Source: Lama guanicoe | Taxonomy: Eukaryota | Reading direction: 5' to 3' | Length of the DNA stretch: 64,000 nt | NCBI GenBank assembly: GCA_013239625.1 | Contig: MU056262.1 | Span: 9,090,134-9,154,133, forward strand | Shown: in pieces, positions 11,900 through 55,214 of the stretch | Layout: each line of letters starts with the position of its first letter | How positions within the stretch are numbered: the stretch's first letter is position 1 | Program-made: the position numbers and the translations under genes | Notes under the pieces: generated by a model | The model's input: the letters and a program-made list of their open reading frames with translations, nothing else | Told to the model about the DNA's origin: nothing | The model's database searches: none

Positions 11900-13020
11900 C
11901 CGACTGGCACCCGGCAGGGCGCAAGAATGTTGGGACAACAGAAGTTATGGGTACCGCCCGGGCTGGCCTTAGAGCACCACCTGGAAGAGCCGAAGGGGCG
12001 GTCAGAGCACCAAAGAGGGGTGGGGGTTTGCGAGCGGAAACAGCCCAGGGGCCCAGGGAGGGGCGGCTAAGCCAGTTTGGGGCCAGGCCGAGCTCCCACG
12101 GAGGCGGGACCAACACCAAACGGCCGCGCAACCAGGGCGGAGCTGGACCAGCTGGGACCTGGCGACAACTGAGCCCTGACCCCTGCCTGGCGCCGAGCTC
12201 GGGTGTTCCAGAGGCTTCCGCTAGACCACAATTCTCAGGGGCTCGCCCCGGCAAGCTCCCTCCCCGATTTAGCCTCACCTCCCGCGCTGCAGGCCGTGTC
12301 TGGGCCTTGGCGCATAGGACGTCGGGAACTGTAGTTTTCTCCAATCAACGTATGCCAGAAAGGAGCACAAGGGGACTGCGTTTCCCAGAGTGCAGCGGGG
12401 TGGCGAGGGAAGGCAGGGGGGAAGGGACAGTCGGTCGCAGACCGCGCTGGGTTGCCGCCGCCGCTGCCGCCATCGTGCCAGCCCCTCGGGTGAGTGTCGG
12501 GGGCTAGCGCGCCTGGGCGGGGGCTGGGCCGCAGGAGGCGCTCTCCGGTCCGCCTGGAGCCTCCGCTGCGAGTTCCTGGGCGGCCCCTCCCCGCCCCCTC
12601 CCCCCAGCGGCCCGAAGCCGCGCAGGGCCCGGGCCATGTGTCGCGCGCGGCTCCGCCTCCCGCCGGTCCTCTGAGGCGGCGGCCAGGGGAACACAGAGAC
12701 AGTCAGGAGCCTATCCTGGGCGTTCCTTGCCCGTGGCGGACGCACCGGACCGCGCCGGGGCCGGGCCTTTTTCTCTAGTCTGGACCATCCAGATGGGGCT
12801 CTCCGGGCCCCGCCCCGTCTGGCCTAGACGGGCCTGCCCGAGTCCCTCAAAGTCTGCAGGCAGGCTAGCGGGCCGACCCCAGGCCTACGTCCTGCCGCCA
12901 GCCTGAAAAGGATCCGGGGATGGGCAAGCTCCACCCGGCTCACTCTGGAGTCAGCATTGGGTAAGGGCGCCCGCCTGCCGCAGCCCTACCCTCACCCGGT
13001 TCCCAGGCGTAGCTGGGCTA
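11900..13020. promoter_or_regulatory. NUTF2 CpG-island promoter (probably bidirectional) with ZNF143/THAP11 motifs at 12323-12335 (minus, ACTACAGTTCCCG) and 12375-12394 (plus, ACTGCGTTTCCCAGAGTGCA), and CCAAT at 12341
   Basis: CpG density and motifs read directly. Confidence 0.8.
12410..12489 (+). other. NUTF2: NUTF2 non-coding exon 1 (5' end approximate)
   Basis: GC-rich leader ending CCCCTCGG|GTGAGT. Joins the acceptor ttcttgcag|GTCTC at 22580, matching the NUTF2 5'UTR as recalled. Confidence 0.75.
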
Positions 13021-37700: not shown

Positions 37701-39158
37701 ATCTCATGATCCCATGGTCACTTGTCAGACTTGCAGCAGCTGGAGAGCCACATGAAGAGCCGAAAGGCACGTGAGCAGGAGGCGCGAGAGCCTGTGCTGG
37801 CCCAGCTGCGGAGCCTGGTCAGCACACTGCAGGGGGCCACTGAGCAAATGGCGGCGACCGTGTCCAGTAGTGTTCGGGCTGAGGTGCAGCACCAGCTGCA
37901 TGTGGCTGTGGGCAGGTGTGTGGGCAGGGCACTGGGCAAGGTGGTGGGTTTGTAAAGGCCCAGACCAGACTCCCTGTTTACCTCATTTCCCTTCACTTGG
38001 CTTTGCAGCCTGCAGGAGTCAATTTTAGCACAAGTACAGCGCATTGTCAAGGGTGAGGTGAGTGTGGCACTCAAGGAGCAGCAGGCCGCCGTCACCTCTA
38101 GCATCATGCAGGCTATGCGCTCAGCTGCTGGCACACCCGTCCCTGCTGCCCACCTCGACTGCCAAGCCCAGCAAGCCCATATCCTGCAGCTGCTGCAGCA
38201 GGGCCACCTCAATCAGGCCTTCCAGCAGGTAAGCCAGGCACTAGGCACAGGTCGGGTCAAGTGTCTCCTGACAAGGCCCAACCATGATACGTTCCACTCT
38301 ACCCATTAGGCTTTGGGTGGTCAGGTCCCAGCTGACTCTTCTTGGTTCTCTTTTGCCTGCTTTTCTCTCTGCCTGGATGCTGGATCCCTTTCTTCCTCCT
38401 CAGCCCGCCTTGCTTCATAGCCACCCTTCTCAAGAAACCTTTCCTAATCCCTTAGAGTAATAACAGCCCTACAGAGTCTCTCTGGGCTTCCCCCTCTGGA
38501 TCCCCTAGAACTCTTCTCTTTGGTCATCTTCCCCCAGGCCACATAGCCAACAAGCAGGCATCTCATCCTGACATTAGCTGCTCTCTACTCAGGCTCTGAC
38601 TGCTGCTGACTTGAACCTGGTGCTGTTCGTGTGTGAAACTGTAGACCCAGGCCAGGTTTTTGGGCAGCCACCTTGCCCCCTCTCCCAGCCTGTACTCCTG
38701 TCACTCATCCAGCAGCTGGCCTCTGACCTTGGCACTCGAACTGACCTCAAGCTCAGGTGAGTGGGTGTAGTCAGGGACTAGGGCTCGGATCAAGGTGGGA
38801 GAGCAGTTCAGAGACTCCTACTCCTGCCTGACACCCCTCCCTGATTTTCTCCAGCAATCCCCTTTGCCCATCTCAGGCTTTGAGGCCTCCATTGCCTCAT
38901 TGCCACCAGGGGGCGCTCCATCTGCTGGAGGCCACCTGCAGCCTGTCCCTTTCCTCCACCCCCAGCTACCTGGAAGAGGCTGTGATGCACCTGGACCACA
39001 GTGACCCCATCACTCGGGACCACATGGGCTCCGTCATGGCCCAGGTGCGCCAGAAGCTCTTCCAGTTCCTGCAGGCCGAGCCACACAACTCACTTGGCAA
39101 AGCGGCCCGGCGTCTCAGCCTCATGCTGCACGGCCTTATGACCCCTAGCCTCCCTTAG
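28541..39158 (+). CDS. EDC4: Enhancer of mRNA-decapping protein 4 (Ge-1/Hedls), 1402 aa, 29 exons: 28541-28625, 30982-31138, 31549-31660, 31963-32062, 32327-32516, 32623-32770, 32859-32963, 33299-33408, 33491-33574, 33667-33762, 33858-33960, 34060-34240, 34333-34405, 34502-34593, 34669-34856, 34943-35064, 35157-35310, 35609-36042, 36128-36232, 36317-36469, 36555-36591, 36723-36900, 37014-37169, 37275-37390, 37482-37647, 37729-37915, 38009-38228, 38593-38756, 38966-39158
   Basis: MASSCASIDIEDATQHLRDILKLDRPAG start. WD40 region (VKIQPVAKYDWEQKYYYGNLIAVS, LSPDGTVLATASHDGFVKFW, CLHEWKPHDGRPLS), Ser-rich linker and helical C-terminus ending RRLSLMLHGLMTPSLP*. Exons sum to 4209 nt with consistent phases. 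Confidence 0.97.
30245..30339 (-). mobile_element. tRNA-derived SINE (vic-1-like) in EDC4 intron 1
   Basis: Reverse complement GGGGGGGGGTTTTAGCTCACTGGTAGAGCATATGCTTAGCATGCATGAGTTCCTGAGTTCAATCACCAGCACCTCC, followed by an A-rich/(GA)n tail. Confidence 0.85.
32517..32622 (+). other. U12-type (minor spliceosome) GT-AG intron, EDC4 intron 5
   Basis: 5'ss GTATCCTTT; branch point CCTTAAC at 32605-32611, about 10 nt from the AG; weak pyrimidine tract. Confidence 0.92.
34958..35008 (+). repeat. Coding (AGY)n poly-serine tract of EDC4 (17 Ser)
   Basis: 15 AGT/AGC codons plus TCC TCT. Confidence 0.9.
36901..37013 (+). other. U12-type GT-AG intron, EDC4 intron 22
   Basis: 5'ss GTATCCTTG; branch point TTCCTTAGC at 36995-37003; purine-rich 3' end (ctacaaggcag). 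Splicing restores the reading frame HEQEQRRLER. Confidence 0.88.
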
Positions 39159-44190: not shown

Positions 44191-44869
44191 TATGGAAGTA
44201 ATTTTTAGTTTGTTTTTTTTTAAATAAAATCTTTCCTGAAACCCTACTGCATAAAACAGGTGGTGTTTTATTGGTGTTCATACATTTTTAGGGTTAAAAT
44301 ATAACATTATCTTATAGTCAGTTAAAGACAATTTCATATATGAAGTTCCCAATAAAGATTTTAATAGATGAACAGACTGAAATGAGGAAGATGGAATGGA
44401 GATTACAATCTCCTTATTTCTTGAGTCATCTATTCCCCTCCACTCTGCAATCTGGGCAAAGTAGTGAGATAATTATGAATCTAAAGCGGAATCGTTCATG
44501 GTAACAATTTTTCTTTAATCTACTTGCTTTGCAGTCTCAGGATGTATTTAAATTTAGTAACAATAACAACCCTTAAAACAGACAAAAACCGTTACGCCAA
44601 AGCTGGCCCAAACTGATATCACCGATCCTCAAGCTTCAACACATCTGACTGTCTGAATTATTTTAATTGCAGTTTTAATAGATTGGTATTTTAAACCGAT
44701 CCTTTGCGGAGTTTCAGAAACCTCTGTTGAAATGCACTACATCCCCCATTTGGCACTATAAAGCGCTCTCCCACCCTAATTTGAATCTAGAAACTTTCTC
44801 CCTACTACCCACAGTGTCTGCCTAAACCTAAGGTGGAAACATTTGGAGCAACACTGAACACTCTCTACT

Positions 44870-45400
44870 CCTGGAGAAAGCCCGGCCCCGCCCTGAAGGC
44901 GTTGATTGGCAAGCCACTCTCAGAGCGCCGCCAACCGGGCAGCCCGGATCTCCCGAGAGCCCGCCCCTGTTCCGCCCCGTGGGCGGCCCGGATTTGTTTT
45001 GGCGTCAAGCGCGCGCTGTGATGACGCCACGACGCTGACGCCTGAGGATGGCGGCGGCGGCGGCGGCCGTGGCTGCGACCCGAAGAGGGTCAGCACAGTC
45101 GCCCAGACGCCGAAGAGCCCGCCGTCCGCGCGAGGTGAGGCGGCCCTGCCCACGGCGACGGTCTGACGGGCAGGAGGGGCTGAGGAGAGGCCACGGTCAC
45201 TTTCTGGAGCACCGGGCCCGTTCCTGCCCATACTTCGGCCCGTGCCCCGTGTTCCGGGGCCTACGGGACTGAGGAGCAGGCCAGGCGATTGCAGCTCGGG
45301 GTTCCCGGTGTCCAAGGGTTAATTGGCCTCGAAACGTGCTGCTGTGCTGGATAACCCGTCTCTGAGGCCGCAAGGGCCAGGTGGACGTGGTCAGCTGTCC
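44870..45400 (+). promoter_or_regulatory. PSKH1 CpG-island promoter: inverted CCAAT (ATTGG ~44905), GC boxes (~44961, ~44972), CRE half-sites (TGACG ~45003, 45022, 45036), YY1-like GATGGCGGC (45047)
   Basis: Direct motif reading plus CpG density. Confidence 0.75.
45040..45134 (+). other. PSKH1: PSKH1 exon 1 (5'UTR, carries the uORF start at 45048); 5' end approximate
   Basis: Donor CGCGAG|GTGAGG at 45134/45135; pairs with the acceptor ctgtctgtatag|GTGTAG at 54032/54033. Confidence 0.75.
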
Positions 45401-48400
45401 TGCCTGATGTTCAGCAAGTCGGCATCGGTCAGGGTGAACTAATCCGGTTGTCCTCACTGTCTTCTCTTGTCCGGCACCTACTCTACACCCTCTATGCGAC
45501 TGAACGCCAGGGGTCAGTGGGGCAGCTGGTCGCTTCCTTGTTCAGGCGGGAAAAAAGCGGGCCTGAGTCCACCTGCTTCGCAAGCCAGTTATCCCTCTGC
45601 TTTGATAAGGGGCAGCCCAGCTCTCCACATTCACTCCCCTTCCACGAAGCGATAAATTGATCATTTCCACTTAAAAATCTGAATTAAGTCCTTCATTGTC
45701 TAAAACTGACTCCTTGCTACCTACAGGATAAAGGCCAAGCTTCATAGCAAGGCGTTCAGGGCTCTTCATAACTGGGTAGAAACATAGCCCGAAGTCAAAA
45801 CCTGGGCACTTTTGTCTCCTGTTTACATAGTTTGTTGGGGATATGTGAATTTGCCTTTAGCTCTGTGTTTTAATACCTTTTTGCTTTAGATATGCAGTTT
45901 TCTCACTTTGTAATACTCTTTTATCCCCTACCTCCACCCACCAGTATGGAAAATTTACATCTCTTCTTTAAAAAAATACCTTGGATTTCATTTCTTTGGA
46001 AAAGCCTCCCTTCACATGTAATCGCTGACTCCTTTGTACTTTTATTCTTGCTACTACTTTGGAGTATATTGTGTTATCTCACCTGATAGTGGGTCTGGGG
46101 ATTGTGTTATTTTTGTTTGCATCTGAGTGTCAGGCTCTGTGCCTGGCATAAAATAGGAGGTGAATCGGCTGGGATAGGTTGCTGGCTTAAGAATGGATAC
46201 AGGCTCAACTATATTGTTGAGTACCTGTCATGGGCCAGGACCTGAAATGAGCAGAGCAAGTGTGTATGTCCTGTTTGCACATGCACATGTATGTGTGTGG
46301 TAAGTGGTGCAGCCTTGTCAACTTTGATGGTCTAAATTCTCCTGGGGTGGTTTTTCAAAATACAAATTCAAGAGTCTCACTGTCTGAGATTTTGATTCAG
46401 AATATCTGGAATCTGGTAGAAATATGTATTTTTTTTAAAAACTCTCAGGTGACTTTACTGTGCTCCCTGGTTGAAGATCATTGCTCCAGAAAACTGTTGT
46501 GTCTTTGTCCGATGGGAAAGGCTGGCGATGCCCTGTGGCACACAGCTGTTGCAGTCTCATTGCCCATACCTTGGGAAGGCAGTATGATTTGGTGGTTAGA
46601 AGTATGGGCTTTGGAGTTAGAAAGACTTAGATTCAGTTCTTGGCTTTTATGAGATCTTGAGGTTCTTTGAGTCCTAGTTTGCTCGTCCCATGATAGGAAT
46701 AATCATGCCTACTTTATGTGGTTGCAGAGAGGAGTGAGAATGCATATAAAACACTTAGTTGGAACTCAGGAAATGGAAGCCACTGTTATTACTAATGGCC
46801 GTTCTTCCCACAGTGCATCCCTTGTCAAAAGCCTGCTCCCTCTTCAAACTGAACCTTGTGTAGGAAGCTACCTAATGTAATGTAATTTCCTTGAGGTAAT
46901 TTCTAATCATCAGGGAAAGCTCTGACAAAACTATGCTTCTACTCAGGGCAGTTGCAGTTGGCTATTCTCCTAGAAGTTATGTGGATTGCTGACTCATTGG
47001 AGGGTGGGTTTGCTGTATTCAGCAAACATTGTCCAGGTCTAATTGCCATTCCTGTGCTTGTTAGGTTGTATAAATGAGCTAGAGAAAGTGCAGCTTTCAG
47101 GAAACCTCTTTGCCTTTTACACTGAGCTAGAGCTGTGCCTCACTTGGAATGGAATATCCCTGAAGATGCTAGTGACTGTGAAATCTGAACTAGATACTGG
47201 GATTTTCTGTCACTCACAAGTTCATAGCTAAATGAGTGAGACTTTGGTTTGGCCTTCTGTTTTACTTTGTAAGTATGAGCATGTTGTGTGAGCAAATTTG
47301 ATCCTCTTCAGTGCTTCCTAGCTGTCTGATGTGAATTGGTTATAGGTGTGTTTAAGTGTTGACTCAAGCTTTCTGATAGCTGAGAACAGCTGTCTCCATT
47401 GATCCCAGGATACACAGAAAAATTTGAGAACAGCCCTGGAAGAAGGGAAACAATTCTGCTTGTTGAGAGCTGGAGAAAGACTTACTTATTTGAACTTTCT
47501 TTCCTTCCAAGAATCTTACTCAGTGAGTATTAAGCTGATTTGTGTTGGCTAGGTCATCACTGAGCTAATTCTTGGTACAACCCCCTGTTGCCATGGCGTC
47601 CCATGTGATGCTGAAGTAAAAAAGAATGTGCTGTTTTCATTTGCTGGGGGCTAATTATCTCAGTTGGACCCCTTCCAGACTGCCAGCCTTGAAGTAGCCT
47701 CACTTAGCATCATAAGAGAAATGGATCAGGGGACTCTCGGTGTAGAACCATCTGGTCTGTTAAGTTCCTTGAGAACAGAGATTATAACTGCTTTCTTTTT
47801 GTCTGTCACAGCCCCTGGCAGAGTTCCTGGCCCACAACAGGAGCTCAGTAAATTTATTTGTGGGTTGTACTTTGGGATTTTGGAAGGAGAACTTCAGGTA
47901 CATTGCCAGAGTCTGTATTTCTGATTATGGAATGGGCTGTAGGTGGGATGTCTCAGATGGAGTTGGGATCAGGATAAAATGATGAGGACACAACAAACTT
48001 TTGAACTTCTCTCCCTCTCTCAGCTCTAAGGCAGAAGTCTGTGCTTACCAAATATTACCATGTAGAGCAGTGGTGCATAGTTGGAGCTCTTGAGAAGTAA
48101 GGTCTTGAGCTACTATATTCCAAAAAGAAGTCATAACAATTTTTATTACAAAATAATATTATAAGTTAAAACATTACAGAAGTGAATAGTGCACCATGTC
48201 TTTAGACACAAACACTAATCATTTTTTTAATTGAAGTATAGTTGATTTACAATGTTGTGTACAGCAAAATGATTCCGTTATACATATGTACATTCTTTTT
48301 CATATTCCTTTCCATTATGGTTTATTATACGATACTGAATATAGTTCCCAGTGCTATACAGTGGGACCTTGTTGTTTATCTGTTTTATATGTAGTAGTTT

Positions 48401-51400
48401 GTATCTGCTAATCCCAGACTCCTAATGTATCCCTCCCCCAGCCCCCTTTCCCTTTGGTAACCATAAGTTTGTCTTCTATGTCTGTGAGTCTGTTTTGTAA
48501 ATAAATTCATTTGTATCATATTTTAGATCCCATATATAAGTGGTATTGTATGATATTTGTCTTTCTCTGAGTTACTTCATTTAGTATAATCTCTAGGTCC
48601 ATCTATGTTGCTGCAAATGATATTTCATTCTTTTTTATGGCTGAGTATTCTCTTGTATATATGATTGTATATATACCACATCTTTATCCATTCATCTGTC
48701 GATGGACACTTTGGTTGCTTTCATGTCTTGGCTGTTGTAAATAGTGCTGCTGTAATCATTGAGATGCAGGTATCTTTTCAAATTAGAGACAAACATTAAT
48801 CATTTTTAATAACTTGGTGTATATTCCTAAAATTTGGTGTAATAATTGGTGTGTATTCCTCTAGATTTTTTCTTATTGCATGTACTAGTCTATACATTTC
48901 TATACTATATATATTTTTAACTTCAAAAATGAAATATGTGGTGATGATTTAAAAATACAGCAGTGGCACAGAAGTGTGTAAAGTGAGAAGTGAAAGTCCC
49001 CCTTCCTTCCTTCCTTCCACCTGTTCCCTCCACATTCCCACACTGTAGAGGTAGTTACTGTCAACAATTTCTCTTCTACCTTACCAGGATATTTTTCTTC
49101 CATATATATGTCTATACCTTTTTTTAATCCCTCATTGGACATATGCTTCACATACTATTTTAAAATACTTGCTACATCAGAAACATGGATCCCAGGACAA
49201 AGCTACTCAATAAACTTGACTGATACTTTTCTTTGTCAGTATATATGGATTTACCTCATTCATTTCAATAGCTGTAGAGCATTCCATTACATGAATATAC
49301 CATAGTTTATTCAATTATTTCCTTACTGATGGATATTTGGATTGTTTCCACTTTCTTTTTATTATTATAAAGAATGTTTTCATGAACTTGCGTGTACAGA
49401 TATATCTTTGCATACTTGTGGAAGTGGTTTTGTAGAATTATTTCTGAAAATGAAATCGCTTTGTCTCATGTCAGTTTCCCTATTTCAGAAAGCAAAATCC
49501 CGCTGTTCCCCCTAAGGTTGCAGAGGTCCTTGTTTGAGGGTTTTGTCTAAAATGACAGACTTCTTTGCCCGTTTTCCTTACTTGCATTAGGTTGGTTAGA
49601 AGTGCTATTTTGCAGTTAATTATTTCTGGGATTCCTGAGCAATTACTGCCTACTTCATTTTGAAAGACAGTCTTTCAAAACACGGGAGCAGAATATAGAG
49701 GTCTTTGAAAACTAAAGGTTGTAAAGCTTTGCCGTAGAGAACAATCTTAGGAGGTGTTATTGGAGAGAGCCGAGTGCCTACTGGCACCCTGCCTGGCGAC
49801 ATCCACAGACTTCTGTGGCCAGGAAATTGTTTCAGGATCCATCCTGTGCCCTCTTTCCTGGGCCCCTGGCCTCCCTGCAGATGGATCTGGCAGCTTGTGG
49901 ACAGACTTGCTTTGGAGTTCCGATAACAATGTGTAATGCCCAAAAGGCCCAAGAGCTCCAGCTTCCTTTGTGTTGCTCCGATTTAACCCCCAGCCTGGCC
50001 TCTTCCTGCCACTTGAAAATTTCTGAGGTTCTGGGATTGTTGCCCTGCAGCAAAAAAGAAATTCAAGAGCTAGCCAGACCACCTTTCATTCATTGTTAAC
50101 AAACATTGAATGACTGCTCTGAGCTCAGCATTTTGCCGGGAGCTAGAGAGATCTAGAAACTTGAGAAGTGGCCCCTTCCCTCAAGAGGCTGACCGCTCTG
50201 GTGATCAAAAGCAGTCTAGATTATAGTAGTGAGCAGCGTGACCCGGACTGTGCTTGGAATGGAGGTTTCAGAAGACATGCCCTTCAGAAAAGATCCTCAG
50301 TAAAGTTTCATTAATTCACCAACTAAGTGTATGAGGAAGGATTGAGGCCTTTATCTGGTGAGGCTGAATTCTGCCAGGCTCCAGGCACTTCTGGAGCTCT
50401 GAATGGAGAACCAGGAGATTTGGGTTTGTGCTTGGCCATCACTATCCGAGTGTCTTTGAACAAGTTTCTACCTTTTTGGCCTGTTGTTTCTACAGAATGT
50501 TAGGACAGAAGTGCTGAGTGCTCACACCCCGCTGCTGCACTCTGTCTACCACATTTACCTTCTTTGAGGAGTGCTTTGGATCAGACTAGGAGTTGAGGGT
50601 GTGGAGGCTGACTCTAGAGAGCTCAGTACTTTCTGTAAGATGCGGCAGAATTGGTGTGGTGAAATGGAATGGTGATTTGTCATAGCTGGCATAGCGTGAC
50701 CCTCCTAGGAGGTCTCTTCCTGAGGCTTCCTCATTCATCCTCACCTACCCATACACCCACCCTGGTCACTCTGCTGGGACACACCCAGGAGAGCTGATGA
50801 CAGGAAAACACGTTTCCTTTCTTCCCAGAAGGAGTTTTGCCAGCTGCCTCCCTTGTCTCTATGTTTGCTTTTTTACCTAACTGATGTGGAAAGAGATTTA
50901 ACTGATATAATGGGAGTGTGGAGCAGCTATGATCACCTGGAGTTATCAGTTGTCTCTCCCTACCCCCCACCCCCCATCCCAAGCTGGCACCCTCTCTCCT
51001 CCACTCTCGGTCTGTAGTTGGGAAGGTGGAGTACCAGCTTCAGCCTGTCTTTGAAGAGTTTCTAACTGAAACAAATGTAAGAGAAACTGTGTCCCAGGTC
51101 AGAGAAGGGTAATCCTTGGTTCTCTTACTGCTGACTTGAGAACCTTGCTCAGGCTTTGTTTAAAGTGAGAGCTCAGGCCTTTTCTTTGTAAACCTTAGTT
51201 TTTCTCATCAGGACCAGACTAGGTATGCACATTGAAAGAAAAAGAGCCATTGAGTATACCTGGAGACATTTATTTTGTGGATCTAGGGTTCTGCCTTCTC
51301 ACCAGGAAGAAGTGACATCTGAGTAGCTGTGCTGGGTCACCCATGCAATTTGTCTTCTCTTTGAATCGTAGGCATTGCTTACAGTGTGGTCTTAGGGATC

Positions 51401-54038
51401 AGGGCCTTTGTTCTGCCTCAGGAAACCTGGCCCAAGAGCTGTATTTTTCCTGGGCTGCAGCCTTTTACCATATTGAGTGTTGTATTTTCCCTGAAAGAAG
51501 AGATGAGTCTGCAGAATTCCAAAGTCCACAGTTCTAATCTTTGGCCTCTGTGAAAAGGAACCTTGTTTCTAAATGCCGTTGTTTAAACATGATTTCCTAA
51601 GCTGCTGTGTGGGATCTCCTGAGCATTTGGGTGAGAACTGCGGCAAGTTCTGAAGAGCCTTGTGTTAGTGGAGGAATCTTTTCTTCTCATATAAAGAAAG
51701 ATAAACCTCATCCTGCTGAGAGTCATGTTTACATACTGATTAAAACCTAAGCCGTTAATCTTTGATCTTTTTATCTGATGGATTGGTAATCAAGGTCTTG
51801 TGTATGTTTCAGAGGTGAGCTTATTCCTTGGAAGAGTTGGCCACATTGGTCAGTTATTACCATCTTGAATTCAGGCTGTTGACTCCCTGGAATCTGAGGG
51901 TCTCTGTGTGGGTTCTCTGTGACCCTCAAGATGCCCTAGCAAAACCTCTTTGGGTCTCCCTCTGCTGCCTTTCATGGGATCTTTTGCTGGCTTTGCAAGG
52001 GGGTGGGGGTAGGAGTTGGTGTTGGTGTTGTCCCTTGGCCCCAAGTACCACCCTTGGGCAGCCATGGAATCTCTGACCAGCTCTTCTCAACCATTAGATT
52101 CTACAGTCGGCCACCCCACCACAATGCATCCAGAACTTAACTTTCCCCATTGTTTACCAAACCTGTCCCTCCTGCTGCACTACTGACCCTCTGCCCAGGA
52201 ACTTGAGCAAGGGACTGGAGTGCCGCTTTCTCCTCCCTTTCACCCCTTAGGTCATGCCTCCATTCCCTGGCAGTACATTCCCCAGCTGACCTCTCTTCAT
52301 TCCCCCCTCCTCACTCACCCTGTCAGTTTTTGACCCTCAGCCTTGTACTTCTTTCTAAACACAGAATTGCCTCTCCTTATAAACCCTTTGGTAGCTTCCT
52401 GTCACTTCCTAGGAAGGTCCTGACTCCTCACCGTAACTTTGTGCTGCTCTCCACAACCTAGTTCCTACTGACTTTCCAACACTTCAGCCCCCAGTCCTGT
52501 CTTCGTATTGCCAAACTGCCCATTTGCAGGCACAGGGTGCTCCTCTGGGCCTTTGAGTGTGTTATTGTCTCTGCCTGAAATGCCATTCCACTTTTCCCCA
52601 TCCGCTTATTCTTACTTCAAACTCAGCGTGGGAGTCCCCTCCTCCAGGAAGCTTTCCGTAATCCCTGCATCATTTTACACATTTACTCTTATTTTCTCAA
52701 GCCTAACACTTACCTTGCTATATTGCAATTACCTGTTTTTATGCTTTGCTCATCATTTAGATTATGAGTTTATTGACCATGTTTTGCCTGTTTTTTTGTG
52801 TATGTGTATGTTAAAACATAACCAGTACTGGATGTCTTATTCATTCCTGTATCCCTAGTAGATGTTCAGTAAACGTTTGATCTGAATTACTTATTTTATC
52901 CCCATTTCTGTATGTCATAATAGGAAATTCTCAGCTCTCTTCTTTCACCCTTCGGGCCCTCAGATAGAGTTAGAGAAGGGCATCCTAGATAGAAATGACC
53001 TCTGGAAAGCAGTACTTCATCATGTCACCTTGTCCAGGGCTCCACCAGCCACAAGGTATTAATAGTCAGAACATCTTTGGGAAACAAATGGGGAAGGCCC
53101 CTGGATCCTCATCCCGAAGAAGCAGCATACCCCAATCCACAGCATGAGTCTCATTTGGGTGAAGCTGCTTGTGTCCTTTCTGTGCTCAAGGCTCCCTCTG
53201 CCTCTTAAGTGAAGCCCAGGTTAGTTTGGTGGCTACCTGGTGGCAGCGTGCTAAGGCTTGTGGTCCCAAGTTCACTGGGATTGATTTTAGCCATTCTGGG
53301 ATTTGTGTGGCATTTTAGTTATCTATGTGGTAAACTGGGTAAGTGGGAGACCCTGGAAAAGGGTGTTAAACTGCCAGGGTGAAGATGATGCCTTAGCAAA
53401 GTTAATGGGAGCCATCCAGAAAGAGTGAGGTTAGGGCAAAGACCCAGGGCAGTGTGTAGTGGTGATGGTTGTTGCAGGGGGAGCATCAACCCCTGCAGGA
53501 GGCCTAGAGGGCCAGGAAGATATCCATGAGCGGGGAAACCTTGGAGAAGTGGCCTTCTGAGCCTTGGTGGGTGATAGTGTTGGAAATGCGCCTCTAACAC
53601 TCCACACCTCCATTTCAGAAAAGATGAGTTAGAGTAATAAGAGGAATGATTTTAACCTTTAAAAAATACAGGACTTCAACTAGGATAAGGGACCCTGGCA
53701 GAGTAGGGAGGAGGGTGGGGATAGTGACAGCTGAGCATGGTGCATGTTCCTGCCCCTCTTCGGAGTTGAAGAGTAGCATGAAAGTCAGATCCAGGGAGAC
53801 ATGAATCAAAAGCCTGGAGCTCAGACCCAGTCTTTCATCTAGATCCTCCATGGTACCTGGACCCTAAGCCCTCAGAGGGGAAAGCCATTCTCCCTTACAG
53901 GGAACTATGTTAGAGGCAGGTCTTCAGGCTAGGTTTATCTAGGGGTAAGGGGTTGGGGTTGAGGAGGGTGGCTGGTATCCCTTCAGAAGTGTCCCTGGCA
54001 TTGCTGAGTTGTCCTTTCTTCTGTCTGTATAGGTGTAG
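45048..54038 (+). CDS. Candidate spliced upstream ORF of PSKH1 (45048-45134 + 54033-54038): [30 protein letters not shown], 30 aa
   Basis: Strong Kozak AGGATGG; 87-nt phase-0 exon piece joined to GTG TAG. Translation is not demonstrated. Confidence 0.5.
46340..46490. mobile_element. MER5-like hAT DNA transposon fragment
   Basis: aaaatacaaattc...gagattttgattcag...tgtattttttttaaaaactctcaggtgac...ggttgaagatcattgct. Confidence 0.55.
46575..46795 (+). mobile_element. MIR SINE
   Basis: ggcagtatgatttggtggttagaagtatgggctttggagttagaaagacttagattcag...gaataatcatgcctactttatgtggttg. Confidence 0.6.
48227..48788 (-). mobile_element. 5'-truncated L1 (3'UTR end) with ~19-bp TSD
   Basis: ttttaattgaagtatagttgatttacaatgttgtg...atccattcatctgtcgatggacactttggttgctttcatgtcttggctgttgtaaatagtgctgc is an artiodactyl L1 3' end. 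TSD ACAAACA(C/T)TAATCATTTTT at 48208-48226 and 48789-48807. Confidence 0.9.
49210..49460 (-). mobile_element. Ancient L1M fragment
   Basis: cattccattacatgaatataccatagtttattcaa...ctgatggatatttggattgtttcca, characteristic of old L1 3' regions. Confidence 0.6.
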
Positions 54039-54102
54039 ATGGGGCACTGCCTGCAGAGCAGGTCCTGCCAGCCTCACTAGGAAGGATGCCTCCGTGTCCG
54101 TG

Positions 54103-55059
54103 ATGGGCTGTGGGACAAGCAAGGTCCTTCCTGAGCCGCCCAAGGATGTCCAGCTGGACCTGGTCAAGAAGGTGGAGCCCTTCAGTGGCACTAAGAGCGA
54201 TGTATACAAGCACTTCATCACAGAGGTGGACAGTGTTGGCCCCCTCAAAGCTGGTTTCCCAGCAGCCAGTCAGTGTGCAAATCCATTCCCTAGTGTGCCC
54301 CCTACTGGCCACACAGAACCTCCCTCAGAACCACCACGCAGGGCTAGGGTAGCTAAGTACAGGGCCAAGTTTGACCCACGTGTGACAGCCAAGTATGACA
54401 TCAAAGCCCTGATTGGCCGAGGCAGCTTCAGCCGAGTGGTACGTGTAGAGCACCGGGCAACCCGGCAGCCATATGCCATTAAGATGATTGAGACTAAGTA
54501 CCGGGAGGGACGGGAGGTCTGTGAATCAGAGCTGCGTGTGCTGCGCCGGGTGCGCCACGCCAACATCATCCAGCTGGTGGAGGTGTTTGAGACACAGGAG
54601 CGCGTGTACATGGTGATGGAGTTGGCCACTGGTGGAGAGCTCTTTGACCGCATCATCGCCAAGGGTTCTTTCACTGAGCGTGATGCCACGCGGGTACTGC
54701 AGATGGTACTGGATGGCGTCCGATATCTGCATGCACTGGGCATCACACACCGAGACCTCAAGCCTGAGAATCTGCTCTACTACCACCCAGGCACTGACTC
54801 CAAGATCATCATCACCGACTTTGGTCTGGCCAGTGCCCGCAAGAAGGGTGATGACTGCCTGATGAAGACCACCTGTGGCACACCTGAGTACATTGCCCCT
54901 GAGGTCCTGGTCCGCAAGCCCTACACCAACTCAGTTGACATGTGGGCCCTGGGTGTTATTGCCTACATCCTGCTCAGTGGCACCATGCCCTTTGAGGATG
55001 ACAACCGCACCCGGCTGTACCGGCAGATCCTCAGGGGCAAGTACAGTTACTCGGGGGAG
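54103..55059 (+). CDS. PSKH1: Serine/threonine-protein kinase H1, coding exon 2 (319 codons). The final exon lies beyond the right edge.
   Basis: MGCGTSKVLPEPPKDVQLDLVKKVEPF dual-acylation N-terminus. Kinase motifs GRGSFSRV, YAIK, HRDLKPEN, DFG, CGTPEYIAPE, DMWALG. Donor GAG|GTGAGT at 55059/55060. Confidence 0.97.
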
Positions 55060-55214
55060 GTGAGTCTGCCCGTCCCAGGATGCTGAGAGGCCCCTGTGTG
55101 TGTGTGTGGTGTGGGGGGTTCTATCCTGCAGCCTTCAATCAGGGGGATGTGCTCTGAAGGCCATGTTCTTGGGACCAGGCAGATAATGTAAAAATGATGA
55201 AGTGAGACTAGTAG

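What the first reader, a model, noticed from the sequence alone, without database searches (positions are those of the whole stretch)
45048..54038. Intron-split, Arg-rich 30-aa uORF heading the PSKH1 mRNA (candidate micropeptide or stalling peptide)
Seen: an optimal-Kozak ATG (A at -3, G at +4) near the 5' end of exon 1 opens 29 codons that run exactly to the phase-0 donor. After the 8.9-kb intron is removed, they meet GTG TAG at the very start of exon 2, giving [30 protein letters not shown]. The six-frame track cannot see this ORF because it exists only after splicing. From memory (unverified), the human leader encodes a similar polyAla peptide ending RRRRARRPREV*, which would mean frame, stop and basic tail are conserved while the Ala run varies in triplets. 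Inference: most scanning ribosomes should start here rather than at the kinase ATG. A polybasic tail next to the stop could slow termination or act as a nucleolar/nuclear micropeptide, so PSKH1 may be functionally bicistronic or translationally gated.
Basis: partly seen in the sequence, partly recalled or inferred. Interest (0 to 1): 0.75.

Follow-up and report, generated by a model that had tools for sequence, protein, structure and literature searches.

The report
PSKH1 leader uORF at YY1 motif
The short upstream reading frame at the head of the PSKH1 kinase gene is really in the sequence, but its start codon is the core of a common promoter motif and its odd peptide looks like a by-product of GC-rich DNA, so it is most likely an ordinary translation damper, not a new micropeptide.

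Summary
The letters are as described. ATG 45048 has A at -3 and G at +4. It opens 29 codons up to a GT at 45135, and an AG at 54031-2 is followed by GTG TAG. Exon 2 encodes PSKH1.

The frame is not more than chance gives. In DNA of this composition, 28 codons stay open after an ATG 62% of the time. The Ala run is a (GGC)6 microsatellite, so triplet-only length changes there would not show coding constraint.

The ATG lies in ATGGCGGC, the core of the YY1/TISU promoter-proximal element. In that published class the ATG is invariant and needed for transcription. In 36% of genes that carry it, it is not the main start codon.

Runs of 20 Arg codons do not stall ribosomes in human cells, which weakens the stalling idea.

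Not tested:
- Conservation: no mammalian DNA is on hand.
- Translation of the frame.

No paper in the searchable library links PSKH1 with a uORF.

The scan noted the two downstream uORFs on this same window (s1-861856), and a repeat-encoded uORF elsewhere in this genome (s1-858892).

Verdict: a probable ordinary uORF, a new member of a known kind, of low interest.

The parts
44700..45599 (.). CpG island, taken to be the PSKH1 promoter and first exon. It is the only one between 30000 and 54000.
   Evidence: 300-bp windows, GC up to 0.72, CpG o/e up to 1.05.
44905..44909 (+). ATTGG (inverted CCAAT). Further upstream-type motifs are TGACG half-sites at 45022-45026 and 45036-45040. The motif names are recalled, not tested.
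   Evidence: Read.
45044..45055 (+). YY1/TISU-type element GAGGATGGCGGC. The ATG and the GCGGC 3' flank are exact. The 5' flank is AGG against the published AAS.
   Evidence: (ATGGCGGC: 3 matches in the window against 0.64 expected; 1 of 100 shuffles reached 3). Motif description in PMC2518114.
45048..45134 (+). uORF1, exon-1 part: ATG plus 28 codons, ending in phase 0 at the donor.
45050..45067 (+). Perfect (GGC)6 microsatellite. Read in the uORF frame as GCG/GCC, it gives the Ala run.
   Evidence: period 3, 6.0 copies, 100% matches.
45030..45100 (+). Predicted long hairpin that encloses the uAUG.
   Evidence: -44.5 kcal/mol, z -2.35; 6 of 200 shuffles fold at least as well.
45135..54032 (+). 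Inferred intron 1 (8898 nt), GT...AG.
   Evidence: Signals only, no RNA evidence.
54033..54038 (+). Last sense codon (GTG) and TAG stop of uORF1 at the start of exon 2.
54039..54080 (+). uORF2: 13 codons plus TAG. Its ATG abuts the uORF1 stop and is in the same frame. Context: T at -3, G at +4.
54086..54103 (+). uORF3: 5 codons plus TGA. The TGA shares its A with the main ATG. Context: A at -3, C at +4.
54103..55059 (+). PSKH1 coding part of exon 2 (319 codons; G at -3 and G at +4), followed by a GT donor at 55060.
   Evidence: (96-98% identity to named mammalian serine/threonine-protein kinase H1). (CaMK-group kinases are nearest in the PDB).

Best explanation
The ATG at 45048 is the invariant core of a YY1/TISU-type promoter-proximal element in the CpG-island promoter of PSKH1.

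Transcripts that start upstream of it carry it as the first AUG. After intron 1 is removed, it opens a 30-codon uORF that ends 6 nt into exon 2.

With two further small uORFs in exon 2 (13 and 5 codons, the last overlapping the kinase AUG by one base), it acts in cis as an ordinary translational damper. The kinase AUG is reached by leaky scanning, by reinitiation over the 64-nt gap, or from transcripts that start downstream of the motif.

The peptide (an Ala run, then an Arg-rich tail) is a by-product of a (GGC)6 repeat and CpG-rich DNA and has no function of its own.

Shown: the sequence anatomy, the gene identity, the motif match and the chance levels. Inferred: transcription from upstream of the ATG, the splice, translation, and the damping.
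For: - Anatomy.
- PSKH1 identity.
- No in-frame N-terminal extension: all 10 homologues fetched, out of the 120 listed, begin at the same MGCGTSK start.
- Only CpG island upstream of exon 2.
- ATGGCGGC is enriched in the window: 3 matches against 0.64 expected.
- PMC2518114 (section 3 parts 1 and 3 read, plus passages):
  - the motif sits at +5 to +30 from the TSS and its ATG is invariant;
  - 64% of the genes start their ORF there, and 36% do not, with a median 5'UTR of 192 nt;
  - motif positions 5-11, including the A of the ATG, are needed for transcription and YY1 binding;
  - TSSs lie both upstream and downstream of the motif.
- PMC3491394 (abstract and passages): there is a class of YY1 sites lying over translational start sites.
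- The open frame is expected by chance (0.62).
- The Ala run is a microsatellite.
- A second ATGGCGGC in a GC-rich region at 12466-12473 (-) also opens an MAAAAAA... frame. Such openings therefore come with the motif.
Against: - The TSS is unknown. If nearly all transcripts start downstream of 45048, the uORF hardly exists.
- The 5' flank departs from the published TISU flank: AGG, not AAS. The paper reports that flank mutations increase leakage.
- Arg content is somewhat above the model (9 of 29; 2.1% of simulated open frames). If that conservation is real at the amino-acid level, the by-product reading would be weakened.
- No YY1 binding data and no ribosome data were available.
Confidence: 0.6

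Rival explanations
1. DNA-level element only. The ATGGCGGC is a YY1 site, and most PSKH1 transcripts start at or downstream of it. The uORF would then be absent from the bulk of the mRNA, and the first AUGs met would be the two small uORFs in exon 2.
For: - In PSMD8 and WBP11, TSSs lie both upstream and downstream of the motif (PMC2518114).
- Positions 5-11 of the motif are needed for transcription.
- TGACG half-sites, which are usually upstream elements (recalled), sit only 8-26 nt before the ATG.
Against: - In the published class the motif is restricted to +5 to +30 downstream of database TSSs, so some transcripts should contain it.
- The donor at 45135 needs an exon upstream of it. The island's GC and CpG peak (45000-45199) spans the ATG.
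Confidence: 0.2
2. Working peptide. The 30-aa product acts either in cis, by slowing termination or elongation through its basic tail and so gating the kinase ORF, or in trans as a nuclear or nucleolar micropeptide.
For: - Strong start context.
- Arg content above the simple model (2.1%).
- The whole peptide would still be in the exit tunnel at termination (established knowledge of tunnel length).
Against: - Twenty CGA or CGG codons do not stall ribosomes in HEK293T. The authors conclude that neither poly-Lys nor poly-Arg stalls appreciably (PMC5316413).
- The open frame is expected by chance, and the Ala run is a microsatellite.
- No paper in the searchable library links PSKH1 with a uORF or with relevant ribosome profiling.
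- A preprint seen only in a search listing (10.1101/2025.07.07.663426) reports in its title that translation of uORFs, rather than their products, matters for cell proliferation.
Confidence: 0.08
3. The exon model is wrong or variable. Exon 1 may use another donor or acceptor, or the island may drive another transcript, so the 30-codon frame is not the main product. For example, the AG inside the TAG at 54037-8 used as acceptor would drop the stop and fuse uORF1 in frame with uORF2, giving 42 codons.
For:
- uORF1 and uORF2 are in the same frame, separated by one TAG whose AG lies 6 nt after the predicted acceptor.
Against: - Both predicted signals are close to consensus. There is an AG-free pyrimidine tract of about 22 nt before 54031-2.
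- The first AG after the tract is normally the one used (established knowledge).
- It is the only CpG island upstream of exon 2.
Confidence: 0.07

Closest known systems
TISU / downstream YY1 elements whose ATG is not the main start codon (the 36% class of Elfakess & Dikstein 2008, PMC2518114; example WBP11)
   Same: - The ATGGCGGC core with the invariant ATG.
- One orientation, in a CpG-island promoter close to the expected TSS.
- The main ORF starts far downstream. The leader here is at least 157 nt from the uATG to the main ATG after splicing, against the class median of 192 nt.
- The ATG opens only a short frame.
   Different: - The 5' flank is AGG, not AAS.
- The distance to the TSS is unknown.
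- The frame is 30 codons long and crosses an 8.9-kb intron.
- YY1 binding was not tested.
Ordinary multi-uORF leaders that work by leaky scanning and reinitiation (GCN4 and ATF4 are the textbook cases; recalled)
   Same: Several short uORFs in series. The last one overlaps the main AUG, and the gaps between them are short (0, 47 and 64 nt after the uORF1 stop).
   Different: There is no evidence of stress-dependent control. uORF3 overlaps the main AUG by one base only, not by a long out-of-frame overlap.
Peptide-dependent stalling uORFs (fungal arginine attenuator peptide, AMD1 MAGDIS, cytomegalovirus gp48 uORF2; recalled)
   Same: A short uORF whose product would lie wholly in the exit tunnel at termination.
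   Different: There is no known stalling motif, no conservation evidence and no ligand. Arg runs do not stall ribosomes in human cells (PMC5316413).
GGC-repeat uORFs such as uN2C of NOTCH2NLC (PMC8186563, abstract in search listing)
   Same: A GGC microsatellite embedded in a uORF in a 5' leader and translated as a homopolymer.
   Different: The repeat is read here as Ala, not Gly. It has only six units, and nothing suggests expansion.

Membership tests
uORF (upstream open reading frame of an mRNA leader) | The AUG lies in the transcribed leader, upstream of the main AUG. | tested here: inconclusive
   The ATG is upstream of the main ATG in the inferred spliced leader.
uORF (upstream open reading frame of an mRNA leader) | An in-frame stop lies before, or overlaps, the main ORF, and the frame is not the main frame. 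| tested here: met
   TAG at 54036-8. The main ATG at 54103 is 70 nt after 54033, so it is in another frame. This holds only if the predicted splice is right.
uORF (upstream open reading frame of an mRNA leader) | Ribosome initiation or occupancy at the AUG. | not testable with these tools
   No Ribo-seq data are on hand. No paper holds both PSKH1 and relevant ribosome profiling (the one paper found is about miR-155).
TISU element | Sequence: core AAGATGGC with an invariant ATG, a 5' flank AAS and a 3' flank GCGGC (PMC2518114). | tested here: inconclusive
   The window has AGGATGGCGGC. The ATG and GCGGC are exact, and -3 A and -1 G fit. -2 is G, not A. The paper reports that flank mutations lower fidelity.
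TISU element | Located +5 to +30 from the TSS, in one orientation. | not testable with these tools
   The orientation fits the gene.
TISU element | Its ATG starts the main ORF after a very short 5'UTR (the 64% class). | tested here: not met
   The main ORF starts at 54103 in another frame, and 10 of 10 fetched homologues begin MGCGTSK. The element therefore belongs, at most, to the 36% class whose ATG is not the main start.
YY1 binding site | Motif AANATGGN(C/G) (as quoted in PMC3491394) and binding of YY1. | tested here: inconclusive
   The sequence AGGATGGCG has one mismatch, at position 2. Binding is not testable here.
Conserved-peptide or stalling uORF | The peptide sequence is conserved across species beyond the nucleotide level. 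| not testable with these tools
Conserved-peptide or stalling uORF | Sequence-dependent ribosome arrest. | not testable with these tools
   Literature only: 20 Arg codons do not stall ribosomes in HEK293T.
GGC-repeat polyGly uORF (uN2C type) | The GGC repeat is read in the Gly frame inside a uORF. | tested here: not met
   The (GGC)6 repeat at 45050-45067 is read as GCG/GCC, which is Ala, in the uORF frame.

The most novel reading that the evidence does not exclude
PSKH1 is headed by a cap-proximal, TISU-driven uORF that nearly every ribosome must translate. The Arg-rich product, still inside the exit tunnel when the ribosome stops 6 nt past the exon junction, slows termination or recycling. 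It thereby sets how many ribosomes go on through the abutting in-frame uORF2 and the overlapping uORF3 to the kinase AUG. One 12-nt element would then couple YY1-dependent transcription to peptide-dependent translational gating of an understudied kinase.
Probability: 0.06. Interest if true: 0.55.

Novelty: new member of a known kind. Interest (0 to 1): 0.22.

Why it matters
PSKH1 is a little-studied kinase, and nothing in the searchable literature describes how its long, three-uORF leader affects its output. Knowing that the first uATG is also the core of a YY1-type promoter element matters for experiment design. Any ATG mutation in a DNA reporter would change transcription as well as translation. 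Beyond that, the case is one more example of a common arrangement.

Tried and rejected
RNA evidence:
- The look-up of sequencing runs on exon 2 listed 24 runs. None is on record as RNA except one raw single-cell run.
No TSS, junction or near-relative comparison could be made.

N-terminal extension:
- I asked whether predicted PSKH1 isoforms of other species carry a leader-derived N-terminal extension that would reveal the leader's frame. All 10 proteins fetched, out of the 120 listed, start at MGCGTSK. Their length differences are internal or C-terminal. The other 110 were not looked at.

Known RNA elements:
- Rfam at E up to 1 gave one chance-level match on the exon-2 leader (Xist_exon4, 14.3 bits against a gathering score of 100).
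- It gave nothing on the promoter and exon-1 part.
- The exon-2 leader shows no unusual folding (z +0.28).

Solved structures and families:
- The PDB holds no PSKH1 chain. CaMK1D is nearest.
- NCBIfam gave only generic kinase matches below cut-off.

Papers:
- PSKH1 with 'uORF': 0 papers.
- PSKH1 with 'upstream open reading': 0 papers.
- PSKH1 with 'UTR': 30 papers hold both terms and 27 were listed. By title and abstract they are mostly microRNA/3'UTR, variant or methylation studies, and none concerns the leader.
- PSKH1 with 'ribosome profiling': 1 paper, not relevant.
- One search was wasted because it did not force PSKH1.
-, on uORFs and 5'UTR introns, found 0 papers.
- The two papers that first described the human gene were not readable. 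The NAR 2002 paper is not held. The Genomics 2000 paper was not tried.
- Supplementary tables are closed. Ribo-seq ORF catalogues and TISU gene lists may name a PSKH1 uORF, and I could not see them.

Rejected ideas:
- An N-terminally extended kinase: the frame is wrong.
- Triplet-only indels in the Ala run as a test of coding: a GGC microsatellite slips in threes anyway.

Not done:
- The joined exon1-exon2 model was never built, typed or searched. The exons were handled apart.
- There was no protein search with the uORF peptide.
- There was no structure prediction.
Full report
**What is in the sequence.**
- The ATG is at 45048-45050, with A at -3 and G at +4.
- From it, 29 codons run open to 45134. 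They begin [19 protein letters not shown] and go on into an Arg-rich tail: 9 Arg and 10 Ala of 29.
- The next two bases are the GT of a consensus-like donor.
- At the other end, a pyrimidine tract with no AG for about 22 nt leads to the AG at 54031-2. Exon 2 opens with GTG TAG at 54033-54038. The implied intron is 8898 nt.
- I did not build, type or search the joined model. The exons were handled apart.

**The rest of the leader.**
- The uORF1 stop is followed at once, and in the same frame, by a second ATG at 54039. This uORF2 has 13 codons and a TAG at 54078-80, with T at -3 and G at +4.
- A third ATG at 54086 opens uORF3: 5 codons, A at -3 and C at +4. Its TGA shares its A with the main ATG at 54103.
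- The main ATG has G at -3 and G at +4. It lies 64 nt after the uORF1 stop, in another frame.
- This part had been noted on the same window by the scan (s1-861856). I checked its coordinates and nothing more.

**Gene and exon model.**
- The 319 codons from 54103 to 55059 are 96-98% identical to proteins that NCBI and UniRef name serine/threonine-protein kinase H1 in many mammals. This covers the top 17 of the 120 listed rows. In all, 1141 proteins had E of 1e-50 or better among 4859 candidates, and 3141 sample-only candidates were left out.
- The PDB holds only CaMK-group relatives.
- The 10 homologues that I fetched all begin at MGCGTSK. None of the 10 has an upstream ATG annotated as an in-frame extension.
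- Between 30000 and 54000 the only CpG island is 44700-45599 (detail). That makes it the natural PSKH1 promoter and first exon.
That fits the gene order I recall for this region. I did not test it.

**Is it more than chance?** No, as far as the open frame goes.
In it, 62% of ATGs are followed by 28 open codons.
- Nine or more Arg occur in 2.1% of such open frames. Nine or more Ala occur in 0.6%.
- The Ala run is a perfect (GGC)6 microsatellite at 45050-45067.
A trinucleotide repeat changes length in threes whether or not it is translated. Triplet-only variation of the Ala run therefore cannot show coding constraint.

**What the ATG is part of.**
- The ATG sits in GAGGATGGCGGC (45044-45055).
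- ATGGCGGC occurs three times in the window against 0.64 expected, and 1 of 100 shuffles reached 3.
  - One copy is here.
  - One is inside a coding-looking exon at 37848.
  - One is in a GC-rich region at 12466-12473 on the minus strand. It also opens an MAAAAAA... frame.
- This is the core of the element that Elfakess and Dikstein called TISU (PMC2518114; abstract, section 3 parts 1 and 3, and passages read). They report:
  - a motif restricted to +5 to +30 from the TSS;
  - a core AAGATGGC with an invariant ATG;
  - a 5' flank AAS and a 3' flank GCGGC;
  - about 4% of human promoters carry it;
  - it is a YY1 site.
- In 64% of the genes with the motif, the main ORF starts at its ATG after a median 12-nt leader. 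In 36% it does not, and their median leader is 192 nt.
- Motif positions 5-11, including the A of the ATG, are needed for transcription and YY1 binding. The first four positions are not.
- In PSMD8 and WBP11 the TSSs lie both upstream and downstream of the motif.
- Whitfield et al. (PMC3491394; abstract and passages) also describe a class of YY1 sites lying over translational start sites.
- Here the ATG and the 3' flank match exactly. The 5' flank is AGG, not AAS. PSKH1 is not named in the TISU paper's main text.

**Most likely mechanism.**
- The ATG is kept in the DNA because it is the core of a YY1-type promoter element.
- Transcripts that start upstream of it carry it as a strong first AUG. 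They translate a 30-codon frame that ends 6 nt into exon 2.
- Ribosomes then either leave or resume scanning. With no gap to uAUG2, 47 nt to uAUG3 and 64 nt to the kinase AUG, some reinitiate at the kinase AUG.
- Ribosomes that leak past the first AUG, and transcripts that start downstream of it, meet uORF2 and uORF3 instead.
- The net effect is damping of PSKH1 synthesis. Every step after the sequence anatomy is inference.
- The folded part of exon 1 (45020-45104 only) forms a long hairpin around the uAUG: -44.5 kcal/mol, z -2.35, with 6 of 200 shuffles folding at least as well. This might add to the damping. The fold lacks the last 30 nt of the exon, and the TSS is unknown.

**The peptide claims.**
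- In HEK293T reporters, 20 CGA or CGG codons were 'impervious to stalling'. The authors conclude that neither poly-Lys nor poly-Arg, at lengths beyond any in the genome, stalls translation appreciably (PMC5316413, passages).
- That speaks against arrest by a tail with 7 Arg in its last 10 residues. It does not address termination as such.
- Nothing here supports or excludes a nuclear or nucleolar micropeptide.
- A GGC repeat translated inside a uORF is a known arrangement (uN2C of NOTCH2NLC, PMC8186563, abstract in listing). There it is read as Gly and matters only when expanded.

**What I could not do.**
There is therefore no TSS, no junction evidence and no comparison with the two near relatives whose runs hold 69% of the exon-2 words.
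- From then on I worked beside that part and sent none of its letters to any search.
- No mammalian DNA or transcript collection is available, and human letters are barred.
- Supplements are closed. Ribo-seq ORF catalogues and TISU gene lists may name this uORF.
- The NAR 2002 paper on PSKH1 is not held.

**Novelty and verdict.**
- In the searchable library no paper holds PSKH1 together with 'uORF' (0) or 'upstream open reading' (0).
- The 27 listed PSKH1+UTR papers do not concern the leader, judging by title and abstract.
- The one PSKH1+ribosome-profiling paper is about miR-155.
- The case itself therefore seems undescribed in main texts. The kind, a YY1/TISU-type ATG opening a short upstream frame ahead of a long leader, was described in 2008.
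- I rate it a new member of a known kind, of low interest.
- The useful practical point is that mutating this ATG in a DNA reporter would confound transcription with translation.

Noticed in passing
window 54031-54041: The AG inside the uORF1 stop codon (54037-8) lies 6 nt after the predicted acceptor AG. If it were used as the acceptor, the stop would be dropped and uORF1 would run in frame into uORF2, giving 42 codons that end at 54078-80. uORF1 and uORF2 are in the same frame, so readthrough of the TAG would have the same effect.
   Followed up: no
window 12360-12473 (- strand): A second ATGGCGGC in a GC-rich stretch opens MAAAAAATQRGLRPT... on the minus strand, and the frame reads on to a TGA near 12364. 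ATTGG and ACTACA...TCCC-like motifs (names recalled) lie just downstream of it on that strand. It may therefore belong to a plus-strand or bidirectional promoter. The gene was not identified.
   Followed up: partly
window 37848-37855 (+): The third ATGGCGGC lies inside what reads as a coding exon (...EQMAATVSS...). I take it from recall to be EDC4, but that was not tested. It shows that the octamer also occurs outside promoters.
   Followed up: no
window 45021-45038 (+): A tiny frame ATG + 4 codons + TGA (MTPRR*) lies 27 nt before the uATG. It overlaps two TGACG half-sites. It would be a further uORF only if transcription starts upstream of 45021.
   Followed up: no
runs X1-X14 (organisms A and B) against X15-X18 (organism C): All 14 holders labelled organism A or B hold the same 0.69 of the sampled exon-2 words, while the four of organism C hold 1.00. 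That pattern suggests fixed differences between close relatives rather than patchy coverage.
   Followed up: no
window 45020-45104 (+): The 5' part of exon 1 folds into a long hairpin around the uAUG: -44.5 kcal/mol, z -2.35, with 6 of 200 shuffles folding at least as well. Much of the stem comes from the GGC repeat pairing with GCC/GCU-rich sequence.
   Followed up: partly
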